From Octopus sinensis (Eukaryota), in contig NC_043001.1 of NCBI RefSeq assembly GCF_006345805.1, positions 14,074,001 through 14,138,000 on the forward strand: a stretch of 64,000 nt of DNA, read 5' to 3'. Position 1 is the stretch's first letter; every line of letters starts with the position of its first letter. The position numbers and the translations under genes are program-made. The notes beneath the pieces are model-generated. The model was given only the letters and a program-made list of their open reading frames with translations. It searched no databases and had not been told where the DNA came from. This document shows, piece after piece, positions 11,888 to 58,920 of the stretch.

Positions 11888-11980
11888 GACGGGCTTCTTT
11901 CTGTTTCCGTCTACCAGATCCATCCACAAGGCTTTGGTCGTCCCGCGGCTATAGTAGTAGACACTTGCCCAAGGTGCCAT
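11620..11980 (-). mobile_element. Family-1 SINE (5' truncated)
   Basis: Homologous to 1-442. Confidence 0.75.
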
Positions 11981-12102
11981 AATGTTTGTAGCTGCGTATC
12001 TGTTTACCTGCTGTTAGTTATAGTTATCTTGGCGCCGGCTTTAACGTTGGGGAAGATAATGGAAGAAAAATGAAGAGACGGATAGAACAGAGAGAAGGAG
12101 AT

Positions 12103-12591
12103 GATTCTTTATTAGAATAATTACATATCCAACATAGATGGGACAACACAGGACATTACAAACAAATATTGTGTTTCTGAATTCGTTTTTAAAGGGGTTT
12201 TTAAAATATGATGAAAATCATATTTTAAAAGTTTACAAGTTTTACAAGTTTACTCTTGGACGTGAAACCGAACGGCTAGACCATACTTTTTTTTTTTACC
12301 ATGGATGAGATTAAGTATGGTCCTTCACACCCAACTTCCTTGCCACATCCTTCTATCTTTTTTCCAGAATATACTTCGCGACAGGTGTCTCCTATCCAGC
12401 CCCATATTGCTCTTCAGATAATATTTGAAGTAATATAGCAAACCAAGGCCGGAGATGAAAATTCCTACCACGACTCCTTTCATTGTTGTTTTCCATATAC
12501 ACTCCTTCAATACGGCGACTGTGCATAAAACACATGCTTCACCTTCCTTTCATAGTCCGGGCGGCGGTACAATCTCGATCATGGAGTAAGC
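12103..12591 (-). mobile_element. Degenerate 3' end of an L1/Tx1-clade LINE (ORF2 C-terminus plus 3' UTR)
   Basis: Minus reads AYSMIEIVPPPGL*KEGEACVLCTVAVLKECIWKTTMKG...LLYYFKYYLKSNMGLDRRHLSRSIFWKK, then shifted KDVARKLGVKDHT; resembles remembered Tx1-like ORF2 C-termini; ends ...TGTCCCATCTATGT...TAATAAAGAATC. Confidence 0.55.
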
Positions 12592-15554: not shown

Positions 15555-16045
15555 CGAAATTTAGGGGGAAGAGGGCCAGTTGATTTGACGGACCATAGAG
15601 CATAACTGGTACTCAATTTATCGACCCCGAAAGGATGAAAGGCAAAGTCGACTTCGGCGGAATTTGAACTCAGAAGGTAACGGTAGACGAAATATCTATT
15701 TCTTTACTACCCACAAGGGGCTAAACACAGAGAGGACAAACAAGGACAGACAAACGGATCAATTCGATTACATCGAGCCCAGTGCGCAGCTGGTAATTAA
15801 TTTATCGACCCCGAAAGAATGGAAGGCAAAGTCGACCTCGGCGGAATTTGAACTCAGAACGTAATGGCAGACTAAATTAAGTCGTTTATATTGACCCCAG
15901 TGCGTAACTGGTAATTAATTTATCGACCCCGAAAGGATGAAAGGCAAAGTCGACCTCAGCGGAATTTGAACTCAGAACGTAACGGCAGACGAAATACGGC
16001 TACGCATTTCGCCCGGGGTGCTAACATTTCTGCCAGCTCGCCGCC
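15555..16045 (-). mobile_element. Family-2 SINE tandem trimer
   Basis: One complete head at 16045; further monomers restart inside the head, one after tail ...GTAAAGAAATA. Confidence 0.8.
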
Positions 16046-17404: not shown

Positions 17405-18032
17405 GAGAAGGCAGTCGATTAGATCGACCCCAGTACGCAACTGGTACTTAATTCATCGACCCCGAAAGGATGAAAAGCAAAGTCGACCACGGCGGAATTT
17501 GAACTCAGACCATAAAGACGGGCGAAATACTGCTAAGCATTTCGCCCGGCATGCTAACCTTTCTTATTTCTTTATTGCCCAGGAGGGGCTACACACAGAG
17601 AAGACAAACAAGGACAGACAAACGGATTAAGCCGTTTGCATCGACCCCAGTGCGTAACTGGTACTTATTTAATCGACCCCAAAAGGATGAAAGGCAAAGT
17701 CGACCACGGCGGAATTTCAACTCAGACCATAACGACAGGCGAAATACTGCTAAGCTTTTCGCCCGGCATGCTAACGTTTCTTATTTCTTTATTGCCCAGA
17801 AGGGGCTACACACAGAGAGGACAAACAAGGACAGACAAAGCGATTAAGTCGATTGCATTTTTTTTACTCTATTACTTGTTTCAGTCATGCGTAACTGGTG
17901 CTTATTTAATCGAACCCGAAAGGATGAAAGGCAAAGTTGACCTTGGCGGAATTTGAACTCAGAACGTAGCGGCAGACAAAACACCGCTAAGCTTTCCGTC
18001 CGGCGTGCTAACGATTCTGCCAGCTCGCTACC
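17405..18032 (-). mobile_element. Family-2 SINE tandem trimer joined at site B
   Basis: Junctions GCTAAC(G/C)TTTC|TTATTTC at ~17560 and ~17780. Confidence 0.8.
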
Positions 18033-22384: not shown

Positions 22385-22990
22385 AGGTGGCGAGCTGGCA
22401 GAATCGTTAGCACGTCAGGCGTAATTCTCAGTGGTATTTCGTCTGCCGTTACGTTCTGAGTTCAAATTCCGCCGAGGTCGACTTTGCTTTTCATTCTTTC
22501 GGGTTCGATTAAATAAGTACCAGTTATGCACTGGGGTCGATATATTCGACTTAACCCCTTTGTCTGTCCTTGTTTGCCCCCTCTGTGTTTAGCCCTTGTG
22601 GGTAGTAAAGAAATAGGTATTTCGTCTGTCACTACGTTCGGAGTTCAAATTCCGCTGAGGTCGACTTTGCCTTTCATCCTTTCGGGTTCGATTAAATAAG
22701 TACCAGTTATGCACTGGGGTCGATATATTCGACTTAACCCCTTTGTCTGTCCTTGTTTGTCTCCTCTGTGTTTAGCCCATTGTGGGCAGTAAAGAAATAA
22801 GAATCGTTAGCACGCCGGGCGAAAACGCTTCGCGGCATTTCGTCCGTTTTCACTTTCTGAGTTCAAATCCACCGCGGTCGAATTTTTACCTTTCAACTCT
22901 TCGGAGTAGCTAAAATAAGTACCAGTTGAATACTGAGGTCAATGTAATCGATTTATCCCCCACCACCGACCGGAAACTGCTGGCGTTGTA
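22385..22990 (+). mobile_element. Family-2 SINE tandem trimer using both site A and site B
   Basis: Junctions AAAGAAATA|GGTATTTCG (~22617) and AAAGAAATAA|GAATCGTTAGC (~22800). Confidence 0.8.
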
Positions 22991-29066: not shown

Positions 29067-29480
29067 TATTTCTATACTACCTACAAGGGGCTATATACAG
29101 AGGGGACAAACAAGGACAGGCAAACGGATTAAGTCGATTACATCGACCCCAGTGCGTAACTGGTACTTAATTTATTGACCCCGAAAGGATGAAAGGCAAA
29201 GTCGACCTCGGCGGAATTTGAACTCAGAACGTGAAGGCGGACGAAATACCTATTTCTTTACTGCCCACAAGGGGGTAAACATAGAGGGGACAAACAAGGA
29301 CAGACAAAGGGAGTAAATCAATTACATCGACCCTAGTGCGTAACTGGTACTTAATTTATCGACCCCGAAAGGATGAAAGGGAAAGTCGACCTCGGCGAAA
29401 TTTGAACTCAGAACGTAGCGGCAGACGAAATACCGCTAAGCATTTCGCCCGGTGTGCTAACGTTTCTGCCAGCTCGCCGC
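29067..29480 (-). mobile_element. Family-2 SINE dimer flanked by a 16-bp target-site duplication
   Basis: TGAGATGAAGG(T/C)ATAT at 29051-29066 and 29486-29501. Confidence 0.8.
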
Positions 29481-38657: not shown

Positions 38658-39005
38658 TTCTTTTGCTGCCATGTGAAATATTGCATACATACAACAATTA
38701 TAATTTAAATTTTGTTAAACTGTTTTCGGTCCTTAAACAAAAGAGCGTAAGGATACAAGTTTTCAAAAAAAAGTATATAATAGCTTAAGATAAAATTAAA
38801 TAAAAGTGCAACTCATCTCGTAACTGCTCAGTCATTTACTCATTCACTCCTTCCTTCGGCATCTTTGTAATTCTTTCTTTCCATTCGTCCGTCACTTATG
38901 TTAACTTCCCTATAACTCATCTTTACTTTCTCCGAACCTCTTAACTTATGATGTGAAGCGTGACTAGTGAATTGACTAACCAACGAACCACCCAATATTT
39001 ATATC

Positions 39006-39404
39006 TATTTCTTTACTACCCACAAGGAGTTAAACACAGAGAGGACAAACAAGGGCAGACAAAGGGATTAAGTCGATTACATCGACCCCAGTGCGTAACT
39101 GCTACTTAATTTATCGACCCCGAAAGGATGAAAGGCAAAGTCGACCTCGGCGGAATTTGAACTCAGAACGCAACGGCAGACGAAATACCTATTTCTTTAC
39201 TACCCACTAGGGGCTATCACAGAGAGGACAAACAAGGACAGACAAAGGGATTAAGTCGATTACATCGACCCCAGTGCGTAACTGGTACTTAATTTATCGA
39301 CCCCGAAAGGATGAAAGGCAAAGTCGACCTCGGCGGAATTTGAACTCAGAACGTAACAGCAGACGAAATACTGCAAGACATTTCGCCCGGCGTGCTAACG
39401 TTTC
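39006..39404 (-). mobile_element. Family-2 SINE dimer hosting the ORF1 array at its site-B hexamer
   Basis: Minus begins GAAACGTTAGCACGCCGGGCG immediately after the array's 3' end; internal site-A junction at 39189/39190. Confidence 0.85.
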
Positions 39405-39554
39405 TTATTTCTTTATTACCCACTAGGGGCGACACAGAAAGGGACACTAAGAAACATGGGGACATATAACATTATAATTAAACTTTATGAACATGAATTG
39501 TTAAACGAAAAAATGATTAAATGAAAGCGATACCAACGGCCCCGTCCGTCAGCA

Positions 39555-40963
39555 TCACTTACCTGTCCTTTGTTTTTCATAGTCACTTGAATGTTCCTTG
39601 CCAATACGAACAAATTCCATATCCATTCTTACTCCGAAATACTCATCCATATTTTCCACGAATTCATCGCTCATTCTTATATCTTTCACCTCCCAATTCT
39701 CGCATTCACACATCACCATAAAGTCACCTATGTTCTTCTTTTCAATCACAGCATACCTAGTCTCACCAACATCATACCATTTATACTCTTCCATTAGACT
39801 TTTAACTTCTTTCTGTTCAGTCATAGTACAAATGTACGGCCTGATATCGATTTCAATCTCTTGTGTGTGTGTATTCTTTTTTTTCTTTTGTTTTCTTGTT
39901 GGGGGGGAGCAGGTGGGTTCAATGTCTGCATGGATAGGGTGGGACTCAGAGGGCGTGGGTGGTTTTGGGGTGGATTGGAGTTCCATATTATTTTCTTTTC
40001 CACGTATTCTTCTCTTCCTCTTACTTCCAGCTTCCTTCCATTTCTGTGTATTCTCTTCCTCTGTTTCCTTCTCCTCTGGTTTCTGCTTCTCTCTCTCTGG
40101 TTCGGGATCCATTTCTTTCCCTGGGGGAGGGCAGAAGGCTCTTATGTGACCCCTCAGGCCACACTTGTAACAACGTGGAGCCTGCCCTCCACCCACACTC
40201 TCATGATCACTTCTCCCAGTCTGATGCTTTCCGTCAGGTCCACCAGTACCTCGGTCTCTGCCTGTACGTTCAGCTCCACTGTTACGCCTCTCCAGCCCTC
40301 GGACTTAACCGAGGCATGGAGAATATCTTCGTCCTCGTGGCCGCTGATCACAGCCGCACAATCCATTCTGCCTCCACGTTTGGTGGCACTCCCTCCACCC
40401 TTATTCGTGTAATCCTCCTGTTTAAATACGTAGGTAACAGTGTACCTTTTCCGACTTCACCGCCTTCGCCGCCATCTTCCTCGCTGCAGATTCACTTTTA
40501 AAATGCACAACTACGGTCCCATACTTGGATCCTCGAGTCAGAAAATTTATTTCCTCCTCAGTTCTTCGCAGGGCTTCCTCTATCCATTCCATGGTTACAA
40601 CTTCTACCCTCTTCCTTTCGTTTGCGAACACCCTGTAAACAATGGTCCTCTTATCATACCATTCTTTTCTCCTGGGTGTCGGTGATAGTTCCACCTCACC
40701 GCTTTCCTTTTTCATGTGTTTCTGGTAACTTGGTAGCTTGGCCAAGTCGACCCCTTTCTCTTCCGCCTTCTTGGTTACACCGGCATAAGTATAACTCAGC
40801 TTCTTTTCCAAATTCTCGCTGCCATTTCTAGCTCCTTCTCAGACGTAGGCGAGTCTGATAAAGACTCGAAAACTCCAGCCTTTTCCTCCATCAGCTTCAC
40901 TGCAATTGCCTGTTCCAGTTCCTCATCTGTCGTGGACAAGTCTGTTAGAGACTCATAGTCCAT
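39555..40963 (-). CDS. L1/Tx1-type ORF1 (gag-like) protein, unit A1, frame-disrupted as assembled
   Basis: Homologous to unit A5; several 1-bp deletions. Confidence 0.7.
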
Positions 40964-41306
40964 TTCCTTCTGTCTGACAGACCGAAAACGGCCGCCAAAA
41001 CAGAAAAAAGTTTAACGCGCTGAACGAGCGAAACGCGAAACCGCGTCAACGCCGTTCAGAATTTCCACAACAACAACCACGCTTTTTGTTCTTTTTTACC
41101 GAATTTTACAGAGCGTAAAAAAACACGACCGACGTCAAACGAAGTGGTGACGTTTCTTATTTCTTTATTACCCACTAGGGGCGACACAGAAAGGGACACT
41201 AAGAAACATGGGGACATATAACATTATAATTAAATTTTATGAACATGAATTGTTAAACGAAAAAATGATTAAATGAAAGCGATACCAACGGCCCCGTCCG
41301 TCAGCA

Positions 41307-42725
41307 TCACTTACCTGTCCTTTGTTTTTCATAGTCACTTGAATGTTCTTTGCCAATACGAATAAATTCCATATCCATTCTTACTCCGAAATACTCATCC
41401 ATGTTTTCCACGAATTCATCGCTCATTCTTATATCTTTCACCTCCCAATTCTCGCATTCACACATCACCATAAAGTCACCTATGTTCTTCTTTTCAATCA
41501 CAGCATACCTAGTCTCACCAACATCATACCATTTATACTCTTCCATTAGACTTTTAACTTCTTTCTGTTCAGTCATAGTACAAATGTACGGCCTGATATC
41601 GATTTCAATCTCTTGTGTGTGTGTGTTCTTTTTTTTCTTTTGTTTTCTTGTTGGGGGGGAGCGGGTGGGTTCAATGTCTGCATGGATAGGGTGGGACTCA
41701 GAGGGCGTGGGTGGTTTTGGGGTGGATTGGAGTTCCATATTATTTTCTTTTCCACGTATTCTTCTCTTCCTCTTACTTCCAGCTTCCTTCCATTTCTGTG
41801 TATTCTCTTCCTCTGTTTCCTTCTCCTCTGGTTTCTGCTTCTCTCTCTCTGGTTCGGGATCCATTTCTTTCCCTGGGGGAGGGCAGAAGGCTCTTATGTG
41901 ACCCCTCAGGCCACACTTGTAACAACGTGGAGCCCTGCCCTCCACCCACACTCTCATGATCACTTCTCCCAGTCTGATGCTTTCCGTCAGGTCCACCAGT
42001 ACCTCGGTCTCTGCCTGTACGTTCAGCTCCACTGTTACGCCTCTCCAGCCCTCGGACTTAACCGAGGCATGGAGAATATCCACTTCGTCCTCGTGGCCGC
42101 TCCACTGATCACAGCCGCCACAATCCATTCTGCCTCCACGTTTGGTGGCACTCCCTCCACCCTTATTCGTGTAATCCTCCTGTTTAAATACGTAGGTAAC
42201 AGTGTTACCTTTTCCGACTTCACCGCCTTCGCTGCCATCTTCCTCGCTGCAGATTCACTTTTAAAGTGCACAACTACGGTCCCGTACTTGGATCCTCGAG
42301 TCAGAAAATTTATTTCCTCCTCAGTTCTTCGCAGGGCTTCCTCTATCCATTCCATGGATACAACTTCTACCCTCTTCCTTTCGTTTGCGCACACCCTGTA
42401 AACAATGGTCCTCTTATCATACCATTCTTTTCTCCTGGGTGTCGGTGATAGTTCCACCTCACCGCTTTCCTTTTTCATGTGTTTCTGGTAACTTGGTAGC
42501 TTGGCCAAGTCGACCCCTTTCTCTTCCGCCTTCTTGGTTACACCGGCATAAGTATAACTCAGCTTCTTTTCCAATTTCCGCTGCCATTTCTAGCTCCTTC
42601 TCAGACGTAGGCGAGTCTGATAAAGACTCGAAAACTCCAGCCTTTTCCTCCATCAGCTTCACTGCAATTGCCTGTTCCAGTTCCTCATCTGTCGTGGACA
42701 AGTCTGTTAGAGACTCATAGTCCAT
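41307..42725 (-). CDS. ORF1 protein, unit A2, frame-disrupted as assembled
   Basis: ORF-track fragments of 88, 179 and 273 aa tile the consensus. Confidence 0.7.
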
Positions 42726-43067
42726 TTCTTCTGTCTGACAGACCGAAAACGGCCGCCAAAACAGAAAAAAGTTTAACGCGCTGAACGAGCGAAACGCGAA
42801 ACCGCGTCAACGCCGTTCAGAATTTCCACAACAACAACCACGCTTTTTGTTCTTTTTTACCGAATTTTCAGGAGCCGAAAAAAACACAACCGACGTCAAA
42901 CGAAGTGGTGACGTTTCTTATTTCTTTATTACCCACTAGGGGCGACACAGAAAGGGACACTAAGAAACATGGGGACATATAACATTATAATTAAACTTTA
43001 TGAACATGAATTGTTAAACGAAAAAATGATTAAATGAAAGCGATACCAACGGCCCCGTCCGTCAGCA

Positions 43068-44480
43068 TCACTTACCTGTCCTTTTTTTCATAGTCACTTG
43101 AATGTTCCTTGCCAATACGAACAAATTCCATATCCATTCTTACTCCGAAATACTCATCCATATTTTCCACGAATTCATCGCTCATTCTTATATCTTTCAC
43201 CTCCCAATTCTCGCATTCACACATCACCATAAAGTCACCTATGTTCTTCTTTTCAATCACAGCATACCTAGTCTCACCAACATCATACCATTTATACTCT
43301 TCCATTAGACTTTTAACTTCTTTCTGTTCAGTCATAGTACAAATGTACGGCCTGATATCGATTTCAATCTCTTGTGTGTGTGTATTCTTTTTTTTCTTTT
43401 GTTTTCTTGTTGGGGGGGAGCGGGTGGGTTCAATGTCTGCATGGATAGGGTGGGACTCAGAGGGCGTGGGTGGTTTTGGGGTGGATTGGAGTTCCATATT
43501 ATTTTCTTTTCCACGTATTCTTCTCTTCCTCTTACTTCCAGCTTCCTTCCATTTCTGTGTATTCTCTTCCTCTGTTTCCTTCTCCTCTGGTTTCTGCTTC
43601 TCTCTCTCTGGTTCGGGATCCATTTCTTTCCCTGGGGGAGGGCAGAAGGCTCTTATGTGACCCCTCAGGCCACACTTGTAACAACGTGGAGCCCTGCCCT
43701 CCACCCACACTCTCATGATCACTTCTCCCAGTCTGATGCTTTCCGTCAGGTCCACCAGTACCTCGGTCTCTGCCTGTACGTTCAGCTCCACTGTTACGCC
43801 TCTCCAGCCCTCGGACTTAACCGAGGCATGGAGAATATCCACTTCGTCCTCGTGGCCGCTGATCACAGCCGCCACAATCCATTCTGCCTCCACGTTTGGT
43901 GGCACTCCCTCCACCCTTATTCGTGTAATCCTCCTGTTTAAATACGTAGGTAACAGTGTTACCTTTTCCGACTTCACCGCCTTCGCCGCCATCTTCCTCG
44001 CTGCAGATTCACTTTTAAATGCACAACTACGGTCCCATACTTGGATCCTCGAGTCAGAAAATTTATTTCCTCCTCAGTTCTTCGCAGGGCTTCCTCTATC
44101 CATTCCATGGTTACAACTTCTACCCTCTTCCTTTCGTTTGCGAACACCCTGTAAACAATGGTCCTCTTATCATACCATTCTTTTCTCCTGGGTGTCGGTG
44201 CCAGTTCCACCTCACCGCTTTCCTTTTTCATGTGTTTCTGGTAACTTGGTAGCTTGGCCAAGTCGACCCCTTTCTCTTCCGCCTTCTTGGTTACACCGGC
44301 ATAGGTATAACTCAGCTTCTCTTCCAAATTCCTCGCTGCCATTTCTAGCTCCTTCTCAGACGTAGGCGAGTCTGATAAAGACTCGAAAACTCCAGCCTTT
44401 TCTTCCATCAGCTTCATTGCAATTGCCCGTTCCAGTTCCTCATCTGTCGTGGACAAGTCTGTTAGAGACTCATAGTCCAT
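43068..44480 (-). CDS. ORF1 protein, unit A3, frame-disrupted as assembled
   Basis: Fragments of 168 and 306 aa tile the consensus. Confidence 0.7.
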
Positions 44481-44823
44481 TTCCTTCTGTCTGACAGACC
44501 GAAAACGGCCGCCAAAACAGAAAAAAGTTTAACGCGCTGAACGAGCGAAACGCGAAACCGCGTCAACGCCGTTCAGAATTTCCACAACAACAACAACGCT
44601 TTTTGTTCTTTTTTACCGAATTTTCAGGAGCCGAAAAAAACACAACCGACGTCAAACGAAGTGGTGACGTTTCTTATTTCTTTATTACCCACTAGGGGCG
44701 ACACAGAAAGGGACACTAAGAAACATGGGGACATATAACATTATAATTAAACTTTATGAACATGAATTGTTAAACGAAAAAATGATTAAATGAAAGCGAT
44801 ACCAACGGCCCCGTCCGTCAGCA

Positions 44824-46232
44824 TCACTTACCTGTCCTTTGTTTTTCATAGTCACTTGAATGTTCCTTGCCAATACGAACAAATTCCATATCCATTCTTA
44901 CTCCGAAATACTCATCCATATTTTCCACGAATTCATCGCTCATTCTTATATCTTTCACCTCCCAATTCTCGCATTCACACCTCCCCATAAACTCACCTAT
45001 GTTCTTCTTTTCAATCACAGCATACCTAGTCTCACCAACATCATACCATTTATACTCTTCCATTAGACTTTTAACTTCTTTCTGTTCAGTCATAGTACAA
45101 ATGTACATCCTGATATCGTTTTCAATCTCTTGTGTGTTTGTATTCTTTTTTTTCTTTTGTTTTCTTGTTGGGGGGGAGCGGGTGGGTTCAATGTCTGCAT
45201 GGATAGGGTGGGACTCAGAGGGCGTGGGTGGTTTTGGGGTGGATTGGAGTTCCATATTATTCTTTTCCACGTATTCTTCTCTTCCTCTTACTTCCAGCTT
45301 CCTTCCATTTCTGTGTATTCTCTTCCTCTGTTTCCTTCTCCTCTGGTTTCTGCTTCTCTCTCTCTGGTTCGGGATCCATTTCTTTCCTGGGGGAGGGCAG
45401 AAGGCTCTTATGTGACCCCTCAGGCCACACTTGTAACAACGTGGAGCCCTGCCCTCCACCCACACTCTCATGATCACTTCTCCAGTCTGATGCTTTCCGT
45501 CAGGTCCACCAGTACCTCGGTCTCTGCCTGTACGTTCAGCTCCACTGTTACGCCTCTCCAGCCCTCGGACTTAACCGAGGCATGGAGAATATCCACTTCG
45601 TCCTCGTGGCCGCTGATCACAGCCGCCACAATCCATTCTGCCTCCACGTTTGGTGGCACTCCTCCACCCTTATTCGTGTAATCCTCCTGTTTAAATACGT
45701 AGGTAACAGTGTTACCTTTTCCGACTTCACCGCCTTCGCCGCCATCTTCCTCGCTGCAGATTCACTTTTAAAATGCACAACTACGGTCCCATACTTGGAT
45801 CCTCGAGTCAGAAAATTTATTTCCTCCTCAGTTCTTCGCAGGGCTTCCTCTATCCATTCCATGGTTACAACTTCTACCCTCTTCCTTTCGTTTGCGAACA
45901 CCCTGTAAACAATGGTCCTCTTTCATACCATTCTTTTCTCCTGGGTGTCGGTGATAGTTCCACCTCACCGCTTTCCTTTTTCATGTGTTTCTGGTAACTT
46001 GGTAGCTTGGCCAAGTCGACCCCTTTCTCTTCCGCCTTCTTGGTTACACCGGCATAAGTATAACTCAGCTTCTTTTCCAATTCCTCGCTGCCATTTCTAG
46101 CTCCTTCTCAGACGTAGGCGAGTCTGATAAAGACTCGAAAACTCCAGCCTTTTCCTCCATCAGCTTCACTGCAATTGCCTGTTCCAGTTCCTCATCTGTC
46201 GTGGACAAGTCTGTTAGAGACTCATAGTCCAT
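44824..46232 (-). CDS. ORF1 protein, unit A4, frame-disrupted as assembled
   Basis: Multiple fragments tile the consensus. Confidence 0.7.
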
Positions 46233-46574
46233 TTCCTTCTGTCTGACAGACCGAAAACGGCCGCCAAAACAGAAAAAAGTTTAACGCGCTGAACGAGCGA
46301 AACGCGAAACCGCGTCAACGCCGTTCAGAATTTCCACAACAACAACAACGCTTTTTGTTCTTTTTTACCGAATTTTCAGGAGCCGAAAAAAACACAACCG
46401 ACGTCAAACGAAGTGGTGACGTTTCTTATTTCTTTATTACCCACTAGGGGCGACACAGAAAGGGACACTAAGAAACATGGGGACATATAAATTATAATTA
46501 AACTTTATGAACATGAATTGTTAAACGAAAAAATGATTAAATGAAAGCGATACCAACGGCCCCGTCCGTCAGCA

Positions 46575-47990
46575 TCACTTACCTGTCCTTTGTTTTTCAT
46601 AGTCACTTGAATGTTCCTTGCCAATACGAACAAATTCCATATCCATTCTTACTCCGAAATACTCATCCATATTTTCCACGAATTCATCGCTCATTCTTAT
46701 ATCTTTCACCTCCCAATTCTCGCATTCACACATCACCATAAAGTCACCTATGTTCTTCTTTTCAATCACAGCATACCTAGTCTCACCAACATCATACCAT
46801 TTATACTCTTCCATTAGACTTTTAACTTCTTTCTGTTCAGTCATAGTACAAATGTACGGCCTGATATCGATTTCAATCTCTTGTGTGTGTGTATTCTTTT
46901 TTTTCTTTTGTTTTCTTGTTGGGGGGGAGCGGGTGGGTTCAATGTCTGCATGGATAGGGTGGGACTCAGAGGGCGTGGGTGGTTTTGGGGTGGATTGGAG
47001 TTCCATATTATTTTCTTTTCCACGTATTCTTCTCTTCCTCTTACTTCCAGCTTCCTTCCATTTCTGTGTATTCTCTTCCTCTGTTTCCTTCTCCTCTGGT
47101 TTCTGCTTCTCTCTCTCTGGTTCGGGATCCATTTCTTTCCCTGGGGGAGGGCAGAAGGCTCTTATGTGACCCCTCAGGCCACACTTGTAACAACGTGGAG
47201 CCCTGCCCTCCACCCACACTCTCATGATCACTTCTCCCAGTCTGATGCTTTCCGTCAGGTCCACCAGTACCTCGGTCTCTGCCTGTACGTTCAGCTCCAC
47301 TGTTACGCCTCTCCAGCCCTCGGACTTAACCGAGGCATGGAGAATATCCACTTCGTCCTCGTGGCCGCTGATCACAGCCGCCACAATCCATTCTGCCTCC
47401 ACGTTTGGTGGCACTCCCTCCACCCTTATTCGTGTAATCCTCCTGTTTAAATACGTAGGTAACAGTGTTACCTTTTCCGACTTCACCGCCTTCGCTGCCA
47501 TCTTCCTCGCTGCAGATTCACTTTTAAAGTGCACAACTACGGTCCCGTACTTGGATCCTCGAGTCAGAAAATTTATTTCCTCCTCAGTTCTTCGCAGGGC
47601 TTCCTCTATCCATTCCATGGATACAACTTCTACCCTCTTCCTTTCGTTTGCGCACACCCTGTAAACAATGGTCCTCTTATCATACCATTCTTTTCTCCTG
47701 GGTGTCGGTGATAGTTCCACCTCACCGCTTCCTTTTTCATGTGTTTCTGGTAACTTGGTAGCTTGGCCAAGTCGACCCCTTTCTCTTCCGCCTTCTTGGT
47801 TACACCGGCATAAGTATAACTCAGCTTCTTTTCCAAATTCCTTCGCTGCCATTTCTAGCTCCTTCTCAGACGTAGGCGAGTCTGATAAAGACTCGAAAAC
47901 TCCAGCCTTTTCCTCCATCAGCTTCACTGCAATTGCCTGTTCCAGTTCCTCATCTGTCGTGGACAAGTCTGTTAGAGACTCATAGTCCAT
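46575..47990 (-). CDS. L1/Tx1-type ORF1 (gag-like) protein, unit A5, 471 aa open frame
   Basis: RRM-like segments GTVVVHFKSESAARKMA and TRIRVEGVPP, VWVEGRAPR-CYKCGLRGHIRAFC (CX2CX4HX4C), basic KRKRRIR and RKQKKKK; residues ~51-87 read a compensated alternative frame. Confidence 0.8.
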   Translation of the reverse strand: MDYESLTDLSTTDEELEQAIAVKLMEEKAGVFESLSDSPTSEKELEMAAKEFGKEAELYLCRCNQEGGRERGRLGQATKLPETHEKGSGEVELSPTPRRKEWYDKRTIVYRVCANERKRVEVVSMEWIEEALRRTEEEINFLTRGSKYGTVVVHFKSESAARKMAAKAVKSEKVTLLPTYLNRRITRIRVEGVPPNVEAEWIVAAVISGHEDEVDILHASVKSEGWRGVTVELNVQAETEVLVDLTESIRLGEVIMRVWVEGRAPRCYKCGLRGHIRAFCPPPGKEMDPEPEREKQKPEEKETEEENTQKWKEAGSKRKRRIRGKENNMELQSTPKPPTPSESHPIHADIEPTRSPPTRKQKKKKNTHTQEIEIDIRPYICTMTEQKEVKSLMEEYKWYDVGETRYAVIEKKNIGDFMVMCECENWEVKDIRMSDEFVENMDEYFGVRMDMEFVRIGKEHSSDYEKQRTGK

Positions 47991-48333
47991 TTCCTTCTGT
48001 CTGACAGACCGAAAACGGCCGCCAAAACAGAAAAAAGTTTAACGCGCTGAACGAGCGAAACGCGAAACCGCGTCAACGCCGTTCAGAATTTCCACAACAA
48101 CAACCACGCCCTTTGCTCCCTCTCACCGAACCTTCAGGAGCCGAAAAAAACACGACCGACGTCAAACGAAGTGGTGGCGTTTCTTATTTCTTTATTACCC
48201 ACTAGGGGCGACACAGAAAGGGACACTAAGAAACATGGGGACATATAACATTATAATTAAACTTTATGAACATGAATTGTTAAACGAAAAAATGATTAAA
48301 TGAAAGCGATACCAACGGCCCCGTCCGTCAGCA

Positions 48334-49738
48334 TCACTTACCTGTCCTTTGTTTTTCATAGTCACTTGAATGTTCCTTGCCAATACGAACAAATTCCATA
48401 TCCATTCTTACTCCGAAATACTCATCCATATTTTCCACGAATTCATCGCTCATTCTTATATCTTTCACCTCCCAATTCTCCATTCACACCTCCCATAAAG
48501 TCACCTATGTTCTTCTTTTCAATCACAGCATACCTAGTCTCACCAACATCATACCATTTATACTCTTCCATTAGACTTTTAACTTCTTTCTGTTCAGTCA
48601 TAGTACAAATGTACATCCTGATATCGTTTCAATCTCTTGTGTGTGTGTATTCTTTTTTTTCTTTTGTTTTCTTGTTGGGGGGGAGCGGGTGGGTTCAATG
48701 TCTGCATGGGAGGGTGGGACTCAGAGGGCGTGGGTGGTTTGGGGTGGATTGGAGTTCCATATTGTTTTCTTTTCCACGTATTCTTCTCTTCCTCTTACTT
48801 CCAGCTTCCTTCCATTTCTGTGTATTCTCTTCCTCTGTTTCCTTCTCCTCTGGTTTCTGCTTCTCTCTCTCTGGTTCGGATCCATTTCTTTCCCTGGGGG
48901 AGGGCAGAAGGCTCTTATGTGACCCCTCAGGCCACACTTGTAACAACGTGGAGCCCTGCCCTCCACCCACACTCTCATGATCACTTCTCCCAGTCTGATG
49001 CTTTCCGTCAGGTCCACCAGTACCTCGGTCTCTGCCTGTACGTTCAGCTCCACTGTTACGCCTCTCCAGCCCTCGGACTTAACCGAGGCATGGAGAATAT
49101 CTACTTCGTCCTCGTGGCCGCTGATCACAGCCGCCACAATCCATTCTGCCTCCACGTTTGGTGGCACTCCCTCCACCCTTATTCGTGTAATCCTCCTGTT
49201 TAAATACGTAGGTAACAGTGTTACCTTTTCCGACTTCACCGCCTTCGCGCCATCTTCCTCGCTGCAGATTCACTTTTAAAGTGCACAAACTAGTCCCATA
49301 CTTGGATCTCGAGTCAGAAAATTTATTTCCTCCTCAGTTCTTCGCAGGGCTTCCTCTATCCATTCCATGGATACAACTTCTACCCTCTTCCTTCGTTTGC
49401 GCACACCCTGTAAACAATGGTCCTCTTATCATACCATTCTTTTCTCCTGGGTGTCGGTGATAGTTCCACCTCACCGCTTTCCTTTTTCATGTGTTTCTGG
49501 TAACTTGGTAGCTTGGCCAAGTCGACCCCTTTCTCTTCCGCCTTCTTGGTTACACGGCATAAGTATAACTCAGCTTCTTTTCCAATTTCCTTGCTGCCAT
49601 TTCTAGCTCCTTCTCAGACGCAGACAAGTCTGATAAAGACTCGAAATCTCCAGCCTTTTCCTCCATCAGCTTCACTGCAATTGCCTGTTCCAGTTCCTCA
49701 TCTGTCGTGGACAAGTCTGTTAGAGACTCATAGTCCAT
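48334..49738 (-). CDS. ORF1 protein, unit A6, frame-disrupted as assembled
   Basis: Homologous to A5; many 1-bp deletions. Confidence 0.65.
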
Positions 49739-50094
49739 TTCCTTCTGTCTGACAGACCGAAAACGGCCGCCAAAACAGAAAAAAGTTTAACGCGCTGAAC
49801 GAGCGAAACGCGAAACCGCGTCAACGCCGTTCAGAATTTCCACAACAACAACCACGCTTTTTGTTCTTTTTTACCGAATTTTACAGAGCGTAAAAAAACA
49901 CGACCGACGTCAAACGAAGTGGTGACGTTTCTGATTTCTTTATTACCCACTAGGGGCTACATAGAGGGGACATTACAAACATTGGGGACATAGAACATCA
50001 CAATTACATATATATGAGCAAAATGGAATATGAAAATGATATATGAGAGTGATACCGACGGCCCCATCCGCCAGCATCACTTATCTGTCCTTCT

Positions 50095-51410
50095 TCACCC
50101 ATTTCCAATTAGCATTCCTTGTTTTCCTATCACAACATTCGTTTTTCTTTTAGCCATCTCTATCCATTCATCTTTCATTTCCACTGACCTCCAACACACA
50201 CCCTCTTCCTCAAACCTTCTCATCAATATACCCGTATCATCACTATCCACAGCCGTGTAGCTACAATCTTCGTGTTCGTACCACTTGGTTAACACCTGTT
50301 TTTTAACGTTTTGTATGTCTTTCCCATGTATAACACATAAAAAATGGGTCTCGGGACTTTCTTTGCTCTGTGTGTTATGTTTTGGATTTTCTTGTAGGAG
50401 GGGAGTGGGTGGAATCACTGTTTGCCGGGGAGGGTCGGGACTCCAAGGGTATGGGTGGTGAGGGGTGGGTTGGGGCTTCGCACAGTTTTTCTTTTTCCTT
50501 CTTTTTCTCTTTGTTCCCCTTCTTTCCACTCTTGTTGCATCTCCTTCTGTCGTTTCCTTCTCTGTTTGTTTCTGTTTATTTTTCCTCTCCTGGGGCTTCC
50601 TCAACGCTTTCCTTTTCTTTTCCTTTGGTGGGGGGGCAGTAGGCTCTTATGTGACCCCTTTGGCCACACTTGTAGCACCTGGGCGCCCTACCTCCACCCA
50701 CACTCTCATAATAATATTTCCAGTTTTATGCTTGTCCGTAATCCTCTCTATAACATCCGCCTCCGTTTGAATGTTCATAACTAGTGTGGCACCTCTCACG
50801 CCTTCATACTTCAAATGGCGTGGAGGATGTCCACTTTATCTTCATTTCCTTTTATAACCGCAGCCGTTATTATTCGCCCTCTAGGTGTGGAGGTATTCCT
50901 TCCACCCTAATTCTGGTTGTCCGCCTATTCAGATACGAGGGTAACAAGTAAAACTTTTCAGTACTCACCACCTTGGCTGCTACATTCCTGGCTGCTTTTT
51001 CACTTTTAAATTGCACCGTTATGGTTCCGTATTGTAATCCTTTTGTCATGTACACAATTTCCTCTCCTGTCTGCTTGAGAGCCTCTTCAATTGCTTCCAT
51101 GTTAATTACTTCCATCTTTCTCCCTCCATTCATAAAAACTTTATATTTAATGGTTCTACGATGGAACCAGTCTCCGTGCCCTACTGGAGGCAGCAGCTCG
51201 ACCTCTCCGTTTTCGTCCTCCTTCACAAACTCCTGGAGGCCCGTCAACTTAGCCAGGTCTATCTCTCTTTCCATTGACTTCTTCGTTACACCTGCGTAGG
51301 TGCCTTCCATCTTTTTCAACAGCCAACTCCTCCTCAGATGACGATACTTCCGTCGAAATTTCAGAGAAATTTCTCGCCTCCATCTCCTCCGTTTGATGGA
51401 GGCGGCTCAT
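50095..51410 (-). CDS. Diverged ORF1 paralogue, unit B, frame-disrupted as assembled
   Basis: TYAGVTKK...DLAKL, LLPSYLNRRTTRIRVEGIPP and reconstructed CYKCGQRGHIRAYC; ATG at the position homologous to type A. Confidence 0.7.
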
Positions 51411-52584
51411 AATCGCCTCAGACCGAAAACGGGCCTCCCGAACCGAAAAAGTGTGCAACGCGCAGAACCAGTGAAACGCGAAAACCGCATCAACTACGTT
51501 CAAAATTTCACAACAATAACCATTCACTTTTTGTTCTTTTTTACCGAATTTTCAGGAGCCGAAAAAAACACAACCGACGTCAAACGAAAGTGGGTAGTGT
51601 TCGTTTCTTCCATCCAATATTTATATCGACTATTAGTATATAAATTTTTACTGGTATATATCAGTCATCTGTAACTTATTATTGGTCAGTGTGTGTTATA
51701 TTTTGACTATTACTGCCTACATACATACATACGTACATACATGCATACGAGTGTGTAAGTGTGTATGAAATAAATCAGTGTTTAATGTGAAAATGTCTAC
51801 TTTGATGGGCGATTCTACTTTGAAAGAAGGGACAAATTCTAAAATATATTGAAAAATTAATTTTTTATGGAAAATACCGAAACAAACACTTGATAAATTA
51901 TATTACAATATAATTTATCAGAATCTCTTAATGGGTACCATCGCCTGTTTCTCGTTCTATTTTTCTTTCTACCCAAACCCCACCATTTTTTGTTTTGTTT
52001 TGTTTTATTATTGGAAATATTACTGATCATATATGTACAAATTTTCTTTCATTTTTTTTTAAAATACATTTTCACTTTTGCTTATTAATAATGTTGCTGC
52101 TGACTCTATGCGAAGCTTTGGACCATCAATTTACTTATTGAAATTAAAAGTAATTTATCTTATAAAATTCCTCCAAGCAAAGATATAATCTCTATCAAGT
52201 TACACCCGTCAAAGAATATTTTCCAAACTATAAAGGCATTGTTGTTCTGAACAAAACAACTCAAATATTGATTTCCACAGATCAAAATGTTCGTGAATAT
52301 GTTATGTTCTCTTTCCTTATATATATATAAGGAGTGGTTGTGTGGTAAGTAGCTTGCTTACGAACCACATGGTTCCGTGTTCAGTCCTACTACGTGGCAC
52401 CATGGGCAAGTGTCTTCTAAGCCTTGTGAGTGGATTTGGTAGACGAAAAACTGAAAGAAGCCAGTCGTTTACATGTGTGTGTGTGTGTGTGTGTGTGACC
52501 GATAGAATAAGTAGTAGGCTTACAAAGAATAAGTCCTGGGGTCGATTTGCTCGACTAAAAGCAGTGAAGCAAAAAAAAAGGAAG

Positions 52585-56702: not shown

Positions 56703-57690
56703 AGGCGACGAGCTGGTAGAATGGTTAGCACCCAAGACAAAATGCTTAGCGGCATTTCGTCCGCTCTTACTTTCTGTGTTCAAATGCCACAGAGATCGAC
56801 TTTGCCTTTCGTGCTTTCTGGGTAGCTAAATTAAACGCACTTTCATTTCTTTATTGCCCACAGGGAGCTAAACATAGAAAGGACAAACAAGGACAGACAA
56901 AGAGATTAAGTCGATTACATCGACCCCAGTGCGTAACTGCTACTTAATTTATCGACCTCGAAAGGATGAAAGGCAAAGTCAACCTCAGCGGAATTTGAAC
57001 TCAAGCACTGGGGTCGATGTAATCGGCTAGCTGCCACCCTCAAATTTCTGGCTTTGTTCCAATAATAGGAAGGATTTTACTGTCGCTACTTATTATCACT
57101 AGCGAATACCATCCATCCATGTATCCATTCTCTCCAACTATTCTTGAGAAGGTCCTTGGAGTAGAGTCCTCAGGCACCTCATCCATAGTGTCGTACCAAA
57201 CAGCCATCATTACATTTCTCATTTCTTTATTGCCCACAGGGAGCTAAACATAGAAAGGACAAACAAGGACAGACAAAGAGATTAAGTCGATTACATCGAC
57301 CCCAGTGCGTAACTGCTACTTAATTTATCGACCTCGAAAGGATGAAAGGCAAAGTCAACCTCAGCGGAATTTGAACTCAGAACGTAGGGGCAGACGAAAT
57401 ACCTATTTCTTTACTACCCACAAGGGGCCAAACATAGAGAGGACAAACAAGGACAGGCAAAGGGATTAAGTCGATTACATCGACCCCGGTGCGTAACTGC
57501 TACTTATTTAATCGACTCCGAAAGGATGAAAGGCAAAGTGGACCTCGGCGGAATTAGAACTCAGGACGTAGCGGCAGACGAAATACCGCTAAGCATTTTG
57601 CCCGGCGTGCTAACGTTTCTGCCAGCTCGCCGCTGGGGTCGATCTAATCGACTGGCCCCCTCCCCCAAAATTTCCGGCCTTGTACCTAGA
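56703..57690. mobile_element. Nested cluster of family-2 SINEs
   Basis: Plus host copy interrupted by minus copies; an identical 159-bp segment occurs at 56845 and 57221. Confidence 0.75.
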
Positions 57691-58099: not shown

Positions 58100-58700
58100 C
58101 ATTAACGCACACATGCACATACACACACGCACAAACATTCATGTATACACACGCACATACACACACGTGAATACACACACGCGTTTACATACTCACCCTT
58201 ACACACATGCATATATACATATACACATACACACACGCATATATACACATGTACATGCACATATACACACGCACATACACCCACACATATATACACATGC
58301 ACATACACACATGCACATATACACACGCACATACACCCACGCAGACATCACACGCACATACACCCACGCACACATCATACACACATACACACACGCATAT
58401 ATATACATGCACATACAAACACACATATATACACATGCACATACACACACGCAAACACACACACACACATACACACACGCATATATACACACACGCACAT
58501 GCACACACCAGTATATACATATACACATACACTCGCACATACACATATATACACACATGCACATACACACACATATACACACACGCGCATACGTACTCAC
58601 ACGCACATATACACACACATATACACACACATATACACATACAAATACACACATACACACGCGCCCATACTCTCACACACACTTACTCACACGCATGTGT
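58100..58700. repeat. Complex (CA/TA)-rich low-complexity tract
   Basis: Degenerate ACAC/ATAC/GCAC repeats. Confidence 0.9.
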
Positions 58701-58920
58701 GTAGAGTAATTTTATCAGCGGGCATTAACCTAGACAAAAAGCAGAGAGCTCGATACTGGCGGAGAGTAAATAAGCGAGTATTAGACACTATAATAGTTTA
58801 CTTTGTCATCCATTACTGTACAGTTTCACCAGTATGGATATTTCAAATGGTTCATATGGAACAATTTACATGTATATCCGGCTATATACTTTAAATGGTG
58901 GAATCTTGTGTCATGCATAA

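What the first reader, a model, noticed from the sequence alone, without database searches (positions are those of the whole stretch)
39405..51607. Tandem array of ORF1-only ('half-LINE') retroelements with no reverse transcriptase
Seen: seven head-to-tail 1.68-1.76-kb units, each with a 5' UTR, one ~470-aa ORF (RRM-like region plus a single CCHC knuckle) and a short 3' UTR. There is no room for ORF2, and no LTRs or TIRs. Known: this architecture matches L1/Tx1 ORF1 proteins. ORF1-only non-autonomous retroposons exist (HAL1), and gag-only head-to-tail arrays exist at Drosophila telomeres (HeT-A). Inference: this is a non-autonomous, protein-coding, apparently site-specific Tx1-derived family that accumulates in interstitial arrays and is mobilised by a partner LINE shared with a SINE. 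I know of no description of such a system in molluscs.
Basis: partly seen in the sequence, partly recalled or inferred. Interest (0 to 1): 0.92.

Follow-up and report, generated by a model that had tools for sequence, protein, structure and literature searches.

The report
ORF1-only Tx1-like retroelement array, octopus
This stretch of octopus DNA holds seven head-to-tail copies of a "half" jumping gene that keeps the RNA-binding protein of an L1/Tx1-type LINE but has no reverse transcriptase, all lodged in the head of a SINE that shares its 3' end; this extends mammalian HAL1-type elements to molluscs, with a site preference and an array habit of its own.

Summary
The array is real. It has six 1,748-1,761-bp units (98-99% alike) plus one diverged 1,681-bp unit, all on the minus strand. 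They are followed head-to-tail by a SINE, and one 13-bp target-site duplication flanks the whole 12.6-kb block. Only one unit has a full 471-aa ORF, and about 35 residues of it are out of frame; the others are frameshifted. Intact 468-472-aa copies exist at other octopus loci.

The protein has two RRMs (AlphaFold2 pLDDT 91, tandem-RRM fold matches), a CCHC knuckle and a C-terminal domain. Its relatives are all octopod where a source is named. Three of them sit directly upstream of an APE + RT + zf-RVT ORF2, so it is a LINE ORF1p of the L1/Tx1 superfamily.

Units, LINE and SINE share a roughly 40-nt 3' module. At least four ORF1-only subfamilies exist. Copies are solo, 5'-truncated or arrayed on at least five chromosomes. 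One solo copy splits a SINE head with a 17-bp TSD, and the window array joins a SINE at the same nucleotide.

Sense-strand A>G clusters with an ADAR-like context mark two copies and point to an RNA intermediate.

This is a new variant of a known kind (HAL1-like, Tx1-like site preference). How the arrays grow is only partly resolved.

The parts
38992..39004 (.). Left copy of the 13-bp target-site duplication (minus-strand ATATAAATATTGG) that bounds the whole composite
   Evidence: Read directly. Random flank pairs 12.6 kb apart share a 13-mer in 209 of 200,000 trials.
39005..39188 (-). 5'-truncated SINE monomer (body plus tail), the 3'-most member of the composite
   Evidence: It matches SINE positions 50-232 at 95%.
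39189..39405 (-). SINE running from the head motif AGAAACGTTAGCACGCC to the tail. It lacks the first 14 nt (GGCGGCGAGCTGGC) found in intact SINEs.
39406..41157 (-). ORF1-only unit 1 (subfamily A, 1,752 bp), ORF frameshifted
41158..42918 (-). ORF1-only unit 2 (A, 1,761 bp), ORF frameshifted
42919..44674 (-). ORF1-only unit 3 (A, 1,756 bp). It carries the ancestral reading frame across residues 50-90 but is broken further downstream.
44675..46426 (-). ORF1-only unit 4 (A, 1,752 bp), ORF frameshifted
46427..48184 (-). ORF1-only unit 5 (A, 1,758 bp), the only unit with an uninterrupted ORF
46575..47990 (-). 471-aa ORF1 (stop codon included). The ORF ends in the splice-donor-like sequence CAG|GTAAGT.
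47211..47753 (-). Two RRM domains (about residues 80-260)
   Evidence: AlphaFold2 with a 91-sequence alignment gave pLDDT 90.8. The top Foldseek PDB hits are tandem-RRM proteins, E 5e-5 to 1e-3.
47157..47198 (-). Single CCHC zinc knuckle (CYKCGLRGHIRAFC)
46578..46844 (-). Conserved C-terminal domain (about residues 383-471). Gene models elsewhere pick it up as an exon.
46427..46466 (-). 3' module (...TGTCCCTTTCTGTGTCGCCCCTAGTGGGTAATAAAGAAATA) shared with the SINE and the LINE. The same module ends every unit.
48110..48132 (-). Cluster of 9 sense-strand A>G changes private to unit 5 (ADAR-like)
48185..49932 (-). ORF1-only unit 6 (A, 1,748 bp), the most decayed A unit
49933..51613 (-). ORF1-only unit 7 (subfamily B, 1,681 bp, frameshifted). 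Its 5' end carries a head-like segment (TGGAAGAAACG...).
51614..51626 (.). Right copy of the 13-bp target-site duplication

Best explanation
The block 39005-51613 is a composite retrotransposon insertion in an octopus genome. It is a head-to-tail array of ORF1-only ('half-LINE') non-autonomous elements derived from an L1/Tx1-superfamily LINE. Six units are subfamily A and one is subfamily B. The array sits in the head of a SINE that shares the family's 3' recognition module.

Each unit has a short 5' UTR, an ORF1 (N-terminal region, two RRMs, one CCHC knuckle, a charged linker and a C-terminal domain), a 3' UTR of about 150 nt and the shared tail. None has an ORF2.

Shown: the anatomy, the homology to ORF1 of ORF2-bearing LINEs, dispersal, 5' truncation, TSDs and the shared tail.

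Inferred: unit RNA is copied by the ORF2 protein of a related autonomous LINE, which recognises the shared tail. Insertion favours the sequence GGC^AGAAACGTTAGCACGCC in SINE heads. Every member of the family begins with a related segment (AGRAACGTYAC...TTTGAC). Each insertion therefore recreates a landing site next to itself, so units, SINEs and LINEs pile up head-to-tail. DNA-level duplication and homogenisation then act on the arrays. In this particular array most copies are now dead or mis-assembled.
For: Array and units.

Outer 13-bp TSD.

Protein. AlphaFold2 of residues 75-300 gave pLDDT 90.8 with tandem-RRM fold matches and a CCHC knuckle. There are 355 relatives at E<=1e-3. All 16 with a named source are from Octopus or Argonauta.

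LINE link. L013 holds a 503-aa ORF1 that overlaps an intact 1,132-aa ORF2 with Exo_endo_phos + RVT_1 + zf-RVT, itself arranged in head-to-tail tandem with a period of about 5.3 kb. L012 and L008 also show ORF1 followed by ORF2.

Shared tail. It is present in LINE, A, B and D units and the SINE.

Retrotransposition hallmarks. 5'-truncated copies lie inside arrays in L001 and L010. L011 holds a solo copy. A, B, D, LINE and SINE members occur together in mixed arrays. In L014 an ORF1-only copy has a 17-bp TSD, and joining its flanks restores an intact SINE. Six of 31 SINE heads are preceded by the family tail at exactly the same nucleotide.

RNA intermediate. The L011 copy has 65 A>G among 138 private substitutions, clustered, with 5' G depleted. 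Unit 5 has 9 of 9 private substitutions as A>G.

Coding constraint. Intact 468-493-aa ORFs exist in four copies, and dN/dS is 0.34-0.53.

DNA-level processes. Identity within arrays (98.6-98.7%) exceeds identity between arrays (95.8-96.6%), and junction types in L009 follow a repeating pattern.

Precedent. Tandem insertions of Tx1-mobilised SINEU-3 that sandwich a TSD are described in PMC4494074. L1-Tx1 families are listed as recently active in O. vulgaris in PMC13282606.
Against: No ORF2-bearing element with an A-type ORF1 was found. The LINE in L013 is only 35% identical in ORF1, so the actual partner is not identified.

Transcription and trans-mobilisation were not observed.

The site preference rests on two unit-SINE junctions (one with both TSD copies) plus SINE-SINE junctions. 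The arrays in L009 and L010 and the solo copy in L011 are not in SINE heads.

The six internal junction segments (AGAAACGTCACCACTTCG) differ from the canonical SINE head at the 3' junction (AGAAACGTTAGCACGCC). They are therefore not simple TSD copies of this target.

The near-equal pairwise distances between units (27-36 differences) fit a burst, a single event or unequal crossing-over equally well.

Six of the seven ORFs are broken.

Placement in the Tx1 clade was not tested by phylogeny.
Confidence: 0.78

Rival explanations
1. One TPRT event with serial template jumps. The reverse transcriptase first copied the SINE RNA. It then jumped end-to-end onto the 3' ends of six A-unit RNAs and one B-unit RNA, and inserted the whole 12.6-kb concatemer at once.
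For: A single 13-bp TSD bounds the whole composite. The members belong to different families but all face the same way. Units are about equally distant from one another. Unit 5 carries its own RNA-editing-like cluster, as expected if each unit came from a separate RNA molecule. Arrays elsewhere contain copies truncated at different 5' positions. Template jumping by LINE RTs is established for R2 and L1 (PMC11371274 and PMC4494074 mention it).
Against: The outer TSD is equally well explained as the TSD of the SINE, which was later invaded. In L014 both copies of a 17-bp TSD lie inside a split SINE, which shows true DNA-target insertion at this nucleotide. Seven consecutive full-length jumps covering 12 kb would be unusually processive. 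Identity within arrays exceeds identity between arrays in every array.
Confidence: 0.2
2. A single insertion followed purely by DNA-level tandem amplification (unequal crossing-over or replication slippage). On this view the array is a young satellite seeded by a transposable element, and retrotransposition plays no part in array growth.
For: Within-array identity is 98.6-98.7% against 95.8-96.6% between arrays. Junctions are identical within an array but differ between arrays. Junction types in L009 follow a repeating pattern. Arrays seeded by transposable elements are documented in Drosophila (10.1101/158386).
Against: Unequal crossing-over cannot produce copies with different 5' truncation points inside arrays (L001 at consensus positions 1231 and 1419; L010 at 1462). 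It cannot produce arrays that mix subfamilies A, B and D with LINE and SINE. It cannot produce a private cluster of nine A>G changes in one unit. It probably contributes to array growth but is not sufficient on its own.
Confidence: 0.15
3. A tandemly duplicated host gene family: a domesticated ORF1-like RNA-binding protein gene cluster, not a mobile element.
For: Intact ORFs with dN/dS below 1 exist. Gene models in O. vulgaris, O. sinensis and O. bimaculoides include parts of it. Domesticated L1 ORF1-type genes are known (L1TD1, PMC4161310; ZCCHC3-type domains occur in a fish relative).
Against: Six of the seven local copies are frameshifted. The units carry the SINE/LINE 3' module. They have TSDs and 5' truncations. 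They are dispersed over at least five chromosomes. They carry retrocopy-style A>G footprints. The gene models are chimeras made through the CAG|GTAAGT site at the end of the ORF.
Confidence: 0.03
4. Assembly artefact. The copy number and the frameshifts come from mis-assembly or poor polishing of a repeat, and the locus really holds fewer units, or intact ones.
For: About one third of the differences between units are 1-bp indels, many in short homopolymer runs. Tandem repeats are hard to polish.
Against: Arrays of at least 9 units with unit-specific variants are seen at other loci of an independent public assembly. The units here differ by private substitutions, and the ends of the composite are clean with a TSD. 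This rival bears on copy number and ORF integrity, not on the nature of the element.
Confidence: 0.1

Closest known systems
HAL1 ('half-L1') of mammals
   Same: It is a non-autonomous LINE derivative that keeps ORF1 and the LINE ends and has lost ORF2. It is presumed to be mobilised by the ORF2 protein of a related LINE. HAL1 arose more than once, which parallels subfamilies A-D here (HAL1 as cited in PMC5753468 and PMC4161310, plus my recollection of Bao and Jurka 2010).
   Different: HAL1 derives from mammalian L1 with a type II ORF1p (coiled coil, RRM, CTD) and a poly(A) tail, and its copies are dispersed. The octopus elements have two RRMs plus a CCHC knuckle and a specific tail without poly(A). 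They prefer a SINE head and form kb-scale head-to-tail arrays.
Tx1-clade site-specific LINEs and their SINEs (Tx1L in Tx1D; crocodilian SINEU-3 in Mariner-N4_AMi)
   Same: The ORF2 has APE, RT and a C-terminal zinc-binding motif. Insertion goes into a specific sequence inside another repeat, with a TSD of about 16-17 bp. Tandem copies sandwich a TSD through sequential insertion. LINE and SINE share their 5' ends (PMC4494074; PMC4758252).
   Different: Here the target is the head of the family's own partner SINE, and a related segment starts every family member. A protein-coding ORF1-only element is the main occupant. The arrays reach 7-10 units. Clade membership was not tested.
HeT-A of Drosophila telomeres
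   Same: It is a gag-only non-LTR element that forms head-to-tail arrays and depends on a partner's reverse transcriptase.
   Different: HeT-A adds to chromosome ends and has a host function. The arrays examined here are interstitial (13.9-135 Mb into records of 40-182 Mb), are flanked by a TSD, and are largely decayed at this locus.
R1/R2 tandem arrays and satellites seeded by double insertion of transposable elements
   Same: Repeated insertion at the same target gives tandem dimers. These then expand by unequal exchange (10.1101/158386, PMC2718515).
   Different: The enzyme class and the target are different, and those elements are autonomous or non-coding.

Membership tests
LINE ORF1p with RRM plus CCHC knuckle (type I in the Khazina and Weichenrieder scheme, recalled from memory) | RRM fold(s) in ORF1 | tested here: met
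   AlphaFold2 gave pLDDT 90.8 and the secondary-structure order of two RRMs. The top 50 Foldseek hits are tandem-RRM proteins.
LINE ORF1p with RRM plus CCHC knuckle (type I in the Khazina and Weichenrieder scheme, recalled from memory) | CCHC zinc knuckle C-terminal to the RRM | tested here: met
   CX2CX4HX4C at residues 265-278. The family profile hits HIV NC and ZCCHC8 knuckles. Pfam zf-CCHC is found in 13 relatives.
LINE ORF1p with RRM plus CCHC knuckle (type I in the Khazina and Weichenrieder scheme, recalled from memory) | Encoded directly upstream of a LINE ORF2 | tested here: met
   This holds for homologues, not for this element. L013: ORF1 at 1623-3134 overlaps ORF2 at 3058-6456. L012 and L008 show the same order.
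L1/Tx1 superfamily LINE (for the associated autonomous element) | N-terminal APE endonuclease, RT, and a C-terminal zinc-binding motif | tested here: met
   Pfam Exo_endo_phos 1.9e-15, RVT_1 8.2e-31, zf-RVT 5.4e-9 in the L013 ORF2.
Tx1 clade proper | RT groups with Tx1 reference elements in a phylogeny | not tested
   No reference set was available. Indirect support only: the nearest named relatives are teleost proteins with ZCCHC3-type RBD x2 + CCHC + APE + RT, and L1-Tx1 is the only L1-type superfamily among the LINE superfamilies listed for O. vulgaris in the passage read from PMC13282606.
Tx1 clade proper | Sequence-specific insertion | tested here: inconclusive
   There is a precise recurrent junction at GGC^AGAAACGTTAGCACGCC, with a 17-bp TSD in L014. 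However, L009, L010 and L011 lie elsewhere, and the sample is only about 230 kb.
HAL1-type ORF1-only non-autonomous LINE | ORF1 retained and ORF2 absent in all copies | tested here: met
   25 full A copies, plus B, C and D copies of 1.6-1.9 kb, run from 5' end to tail with no RT or APE.
HAL1-type ORF1-only non-autonomous LINE | 3' end shared with an autonomous LINE | tested here: met
   A module of about 40 nt is conserved between the units and the LINE tails in L013 and L001. Identity to the available LINE is partial, so the true partner is not pinned down.
HAL1-type ORF1-only non-autonomous LINE | Independent retrotransposed copies (TSDs, 5' truncation, dispersal) | tested here: met
HAL1-type ORF1-only non-autonomous LINE | Mobilised in trans by the partner's ORF2 protein | not testable with these tools
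   This needs a retrotransposition assay or polymorphism data.
HeT-A-like telomeric gag-only element | Located at chromosome ends and added without an endonuclease or a TSD | tested here: not met
   The related loci examined are interstitial, and the composite has a TSD.
Penelope-like element / retrozyme arrays | Hammerhead ribozyme in the repeat; GIY-YIG RT partner | tested here: not met
   Rfam at gathering thresholds found nothing in the window. The partner has APE and an L1-type RT.

The most novel reading that the evidence does not exclude
Octopods harbour an old, diversified guild of protein-coding half-LINEs (at least four ORF1-only lineages with 30-55% ORF1 identity). These elements supply their own RNA-binding protein, borrow only the ORF2 enzyme, and carry a landing-site motif at their own 5' end, so each insertion creates the next target. 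That would make a self-reinforcing insertion trap that builds mixed LINE, half-LINE and SINE arrays and seeds new satellites. ADAR editing of the transcripts would be written back into the genome with each copy, giving an editing-driven route to diversification of the repeats.
Probability: 0.3. Interest if true: 0.8.

Novelty: new variant of a known kind. Interest (0 to 1): 0.6.

Why it matters
It would extend ORF1-only 'half-LINEs', so far described mainly in mammals (HAL1) and at fly telomeres (HeT-A), to molluscs. It would do so with a different ORF1 type, several parallel lineages and intact, constrained ORFs.

It gives a concrete case in which LINE, half-LINE and SINE share both a 3' recognition module and a 5'/target motif. 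That combination offers a sequence-level explanation for how head-to-tail arrays of retroelements, and eventually satellites, arise.

It identifies a Tx1-like partner family for one of the abundant octopus SINEs; SINEs as a whole make up 11.6% of the O. vulgaris genome according to PMC13282606.

The sense-strand A>G hyperediting footprints show ADAR acting on retroelement RNA in an animal known for heavy RNA editing, with the edits fixed in DNA.

On the practical side, the splice-donor-like end of the ORF creates chimeric gene models in public octopus annotations.

Tried and rejected
- Pfam and PDB sequence searches with the 471-aa protein gave nothing above threshold. The only hits were DUF4833 below its cut-off and weak knuckle matches.
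- A single-sequence AlphaFold2 model was useless (pLDDT 36). A 91-sequence alignment was needed.
- My first alignment of ORF fragments was mis-aligned by MAFFT and I dropped it.
- A profile comparison against the ORF1-like part of a fish relative matched only the knuckle.
- The EEP/endonuclease stretch in gene model P0004 looked at first like an attached ORF2. It lies 11 kb away and is a splicing artefact of the gene model.
- The RT ORF downstream of the L010 array has a CCHC motif followed by a PD...D...K-like motif C-terminal to the RT. I read this by eye as a restriction-like endonuclease, so it belongs to an unrelated LINE group.
- A ribozyme or retrozyme/Penelope-type explanation for the arrays is rejected: there were no Rfam hits. 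ARAGORN does not recognise the SINE head as a tRNA.
- An exact look-up of the window's ORF found no record, so the source assembly and species remain unidentified beyond 'octopod'.
- A search for a higher-order repeat pattern among the six A units found none. Their distances are star-like.
- Microhomology-mediated joining at AGAAA does not fit, because both the tail and the head copies of the motif are retained at the junctions.

Full report
**1. The observation.**
The window contains a head-to-tail array on the minus strand. Using one unit as a BLAST query gives six copies at 97.6-98.5% identity, starting every 1,748-1,761 bp. A seventh, diverged copy matches in three pieces at 70-81%. From the sequence the units are 39406-41157, 41158-42918, 42919-44674, 44675-46426, 46427-48184, 48185-49932 and 49933-51613. 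The claim of one ~470-aa ORF per unit is not right. Only unit 5 has a full ORF (46575-47990, 471 aa). The other units give longest ORFs of 85-306 aa.

Even the 471-aa ORF is out of frame for about residues 50-87 compared with unit 3, unit 7 and intact copies elsewhere. Each unit differs from the six-unit consensus by 9-24 substitutions and 4-12 indel columns. Many of the indels lie in short homopolymer runs. I cannot separate decay from assembly error. Outside the array there is no credible long ORF in the window, and no RT.

**2. The edges.**
Read on the minus strand, the array is followed at its 3' end by a SINE (39189-39405) and a 5'-truncated second SINE monomer (39005-39188). This is what Tandem Repeats Finder reported as a 183-bp repeat. 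The whole composite, 39005-51613, is bounded by a 13-bp direct repeat, ATATAAATATTGG, at 38992-39004 and 51614-51626. Random pairs of 20-nt flanks 12.6 kb apart in this window share a 13-mer in 0.1% of trials. This is a target-site duplication.

**3. The protein.**
Sequence searches against Pfam and PDB gave nothing useful. The word-indexed search found only five Octopus vulgaris gene models, all sharing the C-terminal domain. The exhaustive HMMER search found 355 relatives at E<=1e-3, centred on residues 80-330. Of the 20 I looked up, 16 carry a named source, and each is from Octopus vulgaris, O. sinensis, O. bimaculoides or Argonauta hians.

With a 91-sequence alignment, AlphaFold2 modelled residues 75-300 at pLDDT 90.8. 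Foldseek against the PDB returned tandem-RRM proteins (U2AF65 RRM1-2, IMP3 RRM12, hnRNP A1 UP1, HuR) at E 5e-5 to 1e-3. The family profile matches retroviral nucleocapsid and ZCCHC8 knuckles. The architecture is therefore an N-terminal region, two RRMs, one CCHC knuckle, a charged linker and a conserved C-terminal domain.

**4. It is a LINE ORF1.**
Three relatives sit directly upstream of an ORF2.
- In L013 (O. vulgaris OX597840.1), a 503-aa ORF1 with 35% identity overlaps an intact 1,132-aa ORF2 with Exo_endo_phos, RVT_1 and zf-RVT.
- In L012 (O. sinensis), a 615-aa ORF1 is followed by degraded APE and RT frames.
- In L008, a 603-aa ORF1 is followed 35 nt later by MALLKVGSINVRGLGS..., which I read as the start of an APE.

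The nearest named relatives of the ORF2 are teleost proteins carrying ZCCHC3-type RNA-binding domains x2, CCHC, APE, RT and zf-RVT. In the passage I read from a 2026 repeat annotation of O. vulgaris, L1-Tx1 (13 families, 421 recent insertions) is the only L1-type superfamily among the LINE superfamilies listed as recently active (PMC13282606). I call the family L1/Tx1-superfamily, Tx1-like. I did not run a phylogeny.

**5. ORF1-only elements are a family, not a locus.**
The unit occurs at four further O. vulgaris loci on different chromosome-scale records.
- L009: nine full units plus a B-type unit.
- L010: at least nine units, including one truncated to consensus positions 1462-1740 inside the array.
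- L001: two 5'-truncated copies (starting at 1231 and 1419), one full copy and an inverted partial copy.
- L011: a solo copy at about 90% identity.

None of the 25 full A copies has an ORF2. Three further ORF1-only lineages appeared.
- B: window unit 7, which is 86.7% identical to L009 20836-22515.
- C: L014 in O. sinensis, 1,600 bp.
- D: L001 about 10430-12331, with an intact 493-aa ORF1.

Intact 472-aa ORFs exist in L009 and L010, and a 468-aa ORF in the solo copy. Pairwise dN/dS is 0.34-0.53.

**6. Shared ends.**
All units end in ...TGTCC(C)nTCTnTGTnnGCCCCT(A/T)GTGGGTAATAAAGAAATA. The SINE ends in ...TTTGTCCTCTCTGTGTTTAGCCCCTTGTGGGTAGTAAAGAAATAG. The L013 LINE ends in ...ATTGTCCCCTCTTTGTTGGCCCCTTGTGGGTAAATAAAATAAAAC. 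A 5'-truncated LINE copy in L001 matches the last 54 nt of the SINE at 81%.

The 5' ends are also related.
- LINE: AGGACGTTACTTTGAC.
- A unit: AGAAACGTCACCACTTCGTTTGAC.
- SINE head: GGCGGCGAGCTGGC-AGAAACGTTAGCACGCC.

Shared 5' ends between Tx1 LINEs and their SINEs are on record for crocodilians (PMC4758252 citing Kojima 2015).

**7. Site preference.**
In L014 the C-type element lies between two copies of AGAAA(C/T)GTTAGCACGCC. Joining the flanks restores a complete SINE head and body. The window array joins its SINE at exactly the same nucleotide (39405/39406). These include SINE-into-SINE cases at window 17564, 17781 and 22800. Kojima described the same pattern, tandem copies sandwiching a TSD through sequential insertion, for Tx1-mobilised SINEU-3 (PMC4494074).

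The preference is not absolute. The L009 and L010 arrays and the L011 solo copy are not in SINE heads.

**8. How arrays grow.**
Several facts require a retrotransposition-linked process rather than unequal exchange alone.
- Arrays contain copies with different 5' truncation points.
- Arrays mix A, B, D, LINE and SINE members in one orientation. L001 reads [A truncated][A truncated][A full][D full][LINE 3' fragment].
- Full LINEs themselves stand in tandem (L013).
- Unit 5 has a private cluster of nine A>G changes.

Other facts point to DNA-level duplication and homogenisation as well.
- Within-array identity (98.6-98.7%) exceeds between-array identity (95.8-96.6%).
- Junction sequences are array-specific.
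- L009 shows a repeating order of junction types.

The internal junction segment in the window (AGAAACGTCACCACTTCG) is identical at five of the six junctions (one differs by a single base) but differs from the canonical SINE head at the 3' junction. I therefore infer that it travels with the unit RNA and acts as a ready-made landing site for the next insertion. The rival of a single concatemer made by template jumping is not excluded. The star-like distances between units do not discriminate between the two.

**9. RNA-editing footprints.**
Relative to the 25-unit consensus, the solo L011 copy has 65 A>G changes among 138 private substitutions (G>A 14, T>C 5, C>T 8). Of these, 59 fall in alignment columns 200-800, whereas the other substitutions are spread evenly. 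A 5' G neighbour precedes 12% of the changed sites against 34% of all A sites. Window unit 5 has 9 of 9 private substitutions as A>G within 23 nt of its 5' UTR (48110-48132). This is the signature expected of ADAR hyperediting of the sense transcript, fixed by reverse transcription. It is direct evidence for an RNA intermediate.

**10. Comparison and verdict.**
Functionally the element is a HAL1-type half-LINE. By domain content and target behaviour its parent family resembles Tx1. Its array habit recalls HeT-A, R1 and SINEU-3. It fails the tests for a telomeric element (the related loci are interstitial and the composite has a TSD) and for Penelope/retrozyme arrays (no ribozyme, APE-type partner).

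I found no description of ORF1-only LINE derivatives or of such arrays in cephalopods in five literature searches. The library is incomplete, and Repbase-type consensus libraries could not be checked.

I rate it a new variant of a known kind. The stated ORF integrity is not.

Noticed in passing
L011:8710-10398; window 48110-48132: There are sense-strand A>G hypermutation clusters with 5' G depletion: 65 of 138 private substitutions in the solo L011 copy, and 9 of 9 in window unit 5. This looks like ADAR editing of retroelement RNA written back into DNA.
   Followed up: yes
window 4218-4621, 15578-16031, 17413-18018, 22400-22959, 29067-29467, 57221-57620, 39005-39405: The SINE nearly always occurs as head-to-tail dimers or trimers, with two recurrent junctions. 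One is the tail followed by AGAAACGTTAGCA (head minus its first 14 nt). The other is the tail followed by GTATTTCGTCTGC (SINE position 50). I did not explain the second junction; it may be a second target or a built-in dimeric structure. From memory, the SINE body resembles the CORE-SINE domain (octopus OR1/OR2 of Ohshima and Okada 1994).
   Followed up: partly
window 46575-46583 and the same site in every unit; P0001-P0007: The ORF ends in a consensus splice donor (CAG|GTAAGT). Public octopus gene models splice the C-terminal domain of successive units together. They also splice it onto unrelated genes, for example a 652-aa protein with many domains and a HAUS1-like protein. This creates chimeric annotations.
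   Followed up: partly
L009:22511-23008 and L010:15654-16128: Two arrays on different chromosomes are 98.3% alike and share about 500 bp of 3' flank at 89.6%. That flank reads as a fragment of another ORF1 (RRM-like '...RGGKFATIEARFESTERAREY'). It could be an inter-chromosomal segmental duplication or a repeated insertion into the same older element. Not resolved.
   Followed up: partly
L010:16945-19888: A 5'-truncated LINE of a different group lies about 1.3 kb downstream of the array. It has Pfam RVT_1, then a CCHC motif and a PD...D...K-like motif that I read by eye as a restriction-like endonuclease.
   Followed up: partly
L013:1440-15026: Full-length LINEs (ORF1 + ORF2, period about 5.28 kb) stand in head-to-tail tandem, at least three copies, the first with an intact 1,132-aa ORF2. 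This is a candidate active autonomous element. It carries an A-rich run of about 30 nt in its 5' UTR.
   Followed up: partly
window 49933-50380 versus L009:22030-22350: Window unit 7 (subfamily B) has a C-terminal domain only about 30% identical to the A-type domain, whereas the B-type unit in L009 carries an A-like C-terminal domain. This suggests exchange of modules between subfamilies. The first ~80 nt of the 5' UTR are nearly identical between A and B even though the bodies are 70-80% identical.
   Followed up: no
L001:7020-7818 versus 7813-8325: An inverted partial A copy abuts a direct 5'-truncated copy head-to-head with a 5-bp overlap. This is reminiscent of twin priming, but it would involve two RNA molecules.
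   Followed up: no
L002-L007 (runs SRR11869384-94): A distant relative (P0025, 294-aa ORF) was assembled as the same ~1.7-kb contig in six independent sequencing runs, with the same 5' end in five of them. If those runs are RNA-seq, this may be a discrete transcript of a related ORF1-only element. I did not check the run type or species.
   Followed up: no
window 11356-11982 and 58113-58709: The only other long ORFs in the window are translations of TA/CA-rich microsatellite-like low-complexity DNA and are not genes.
   Followed up: no
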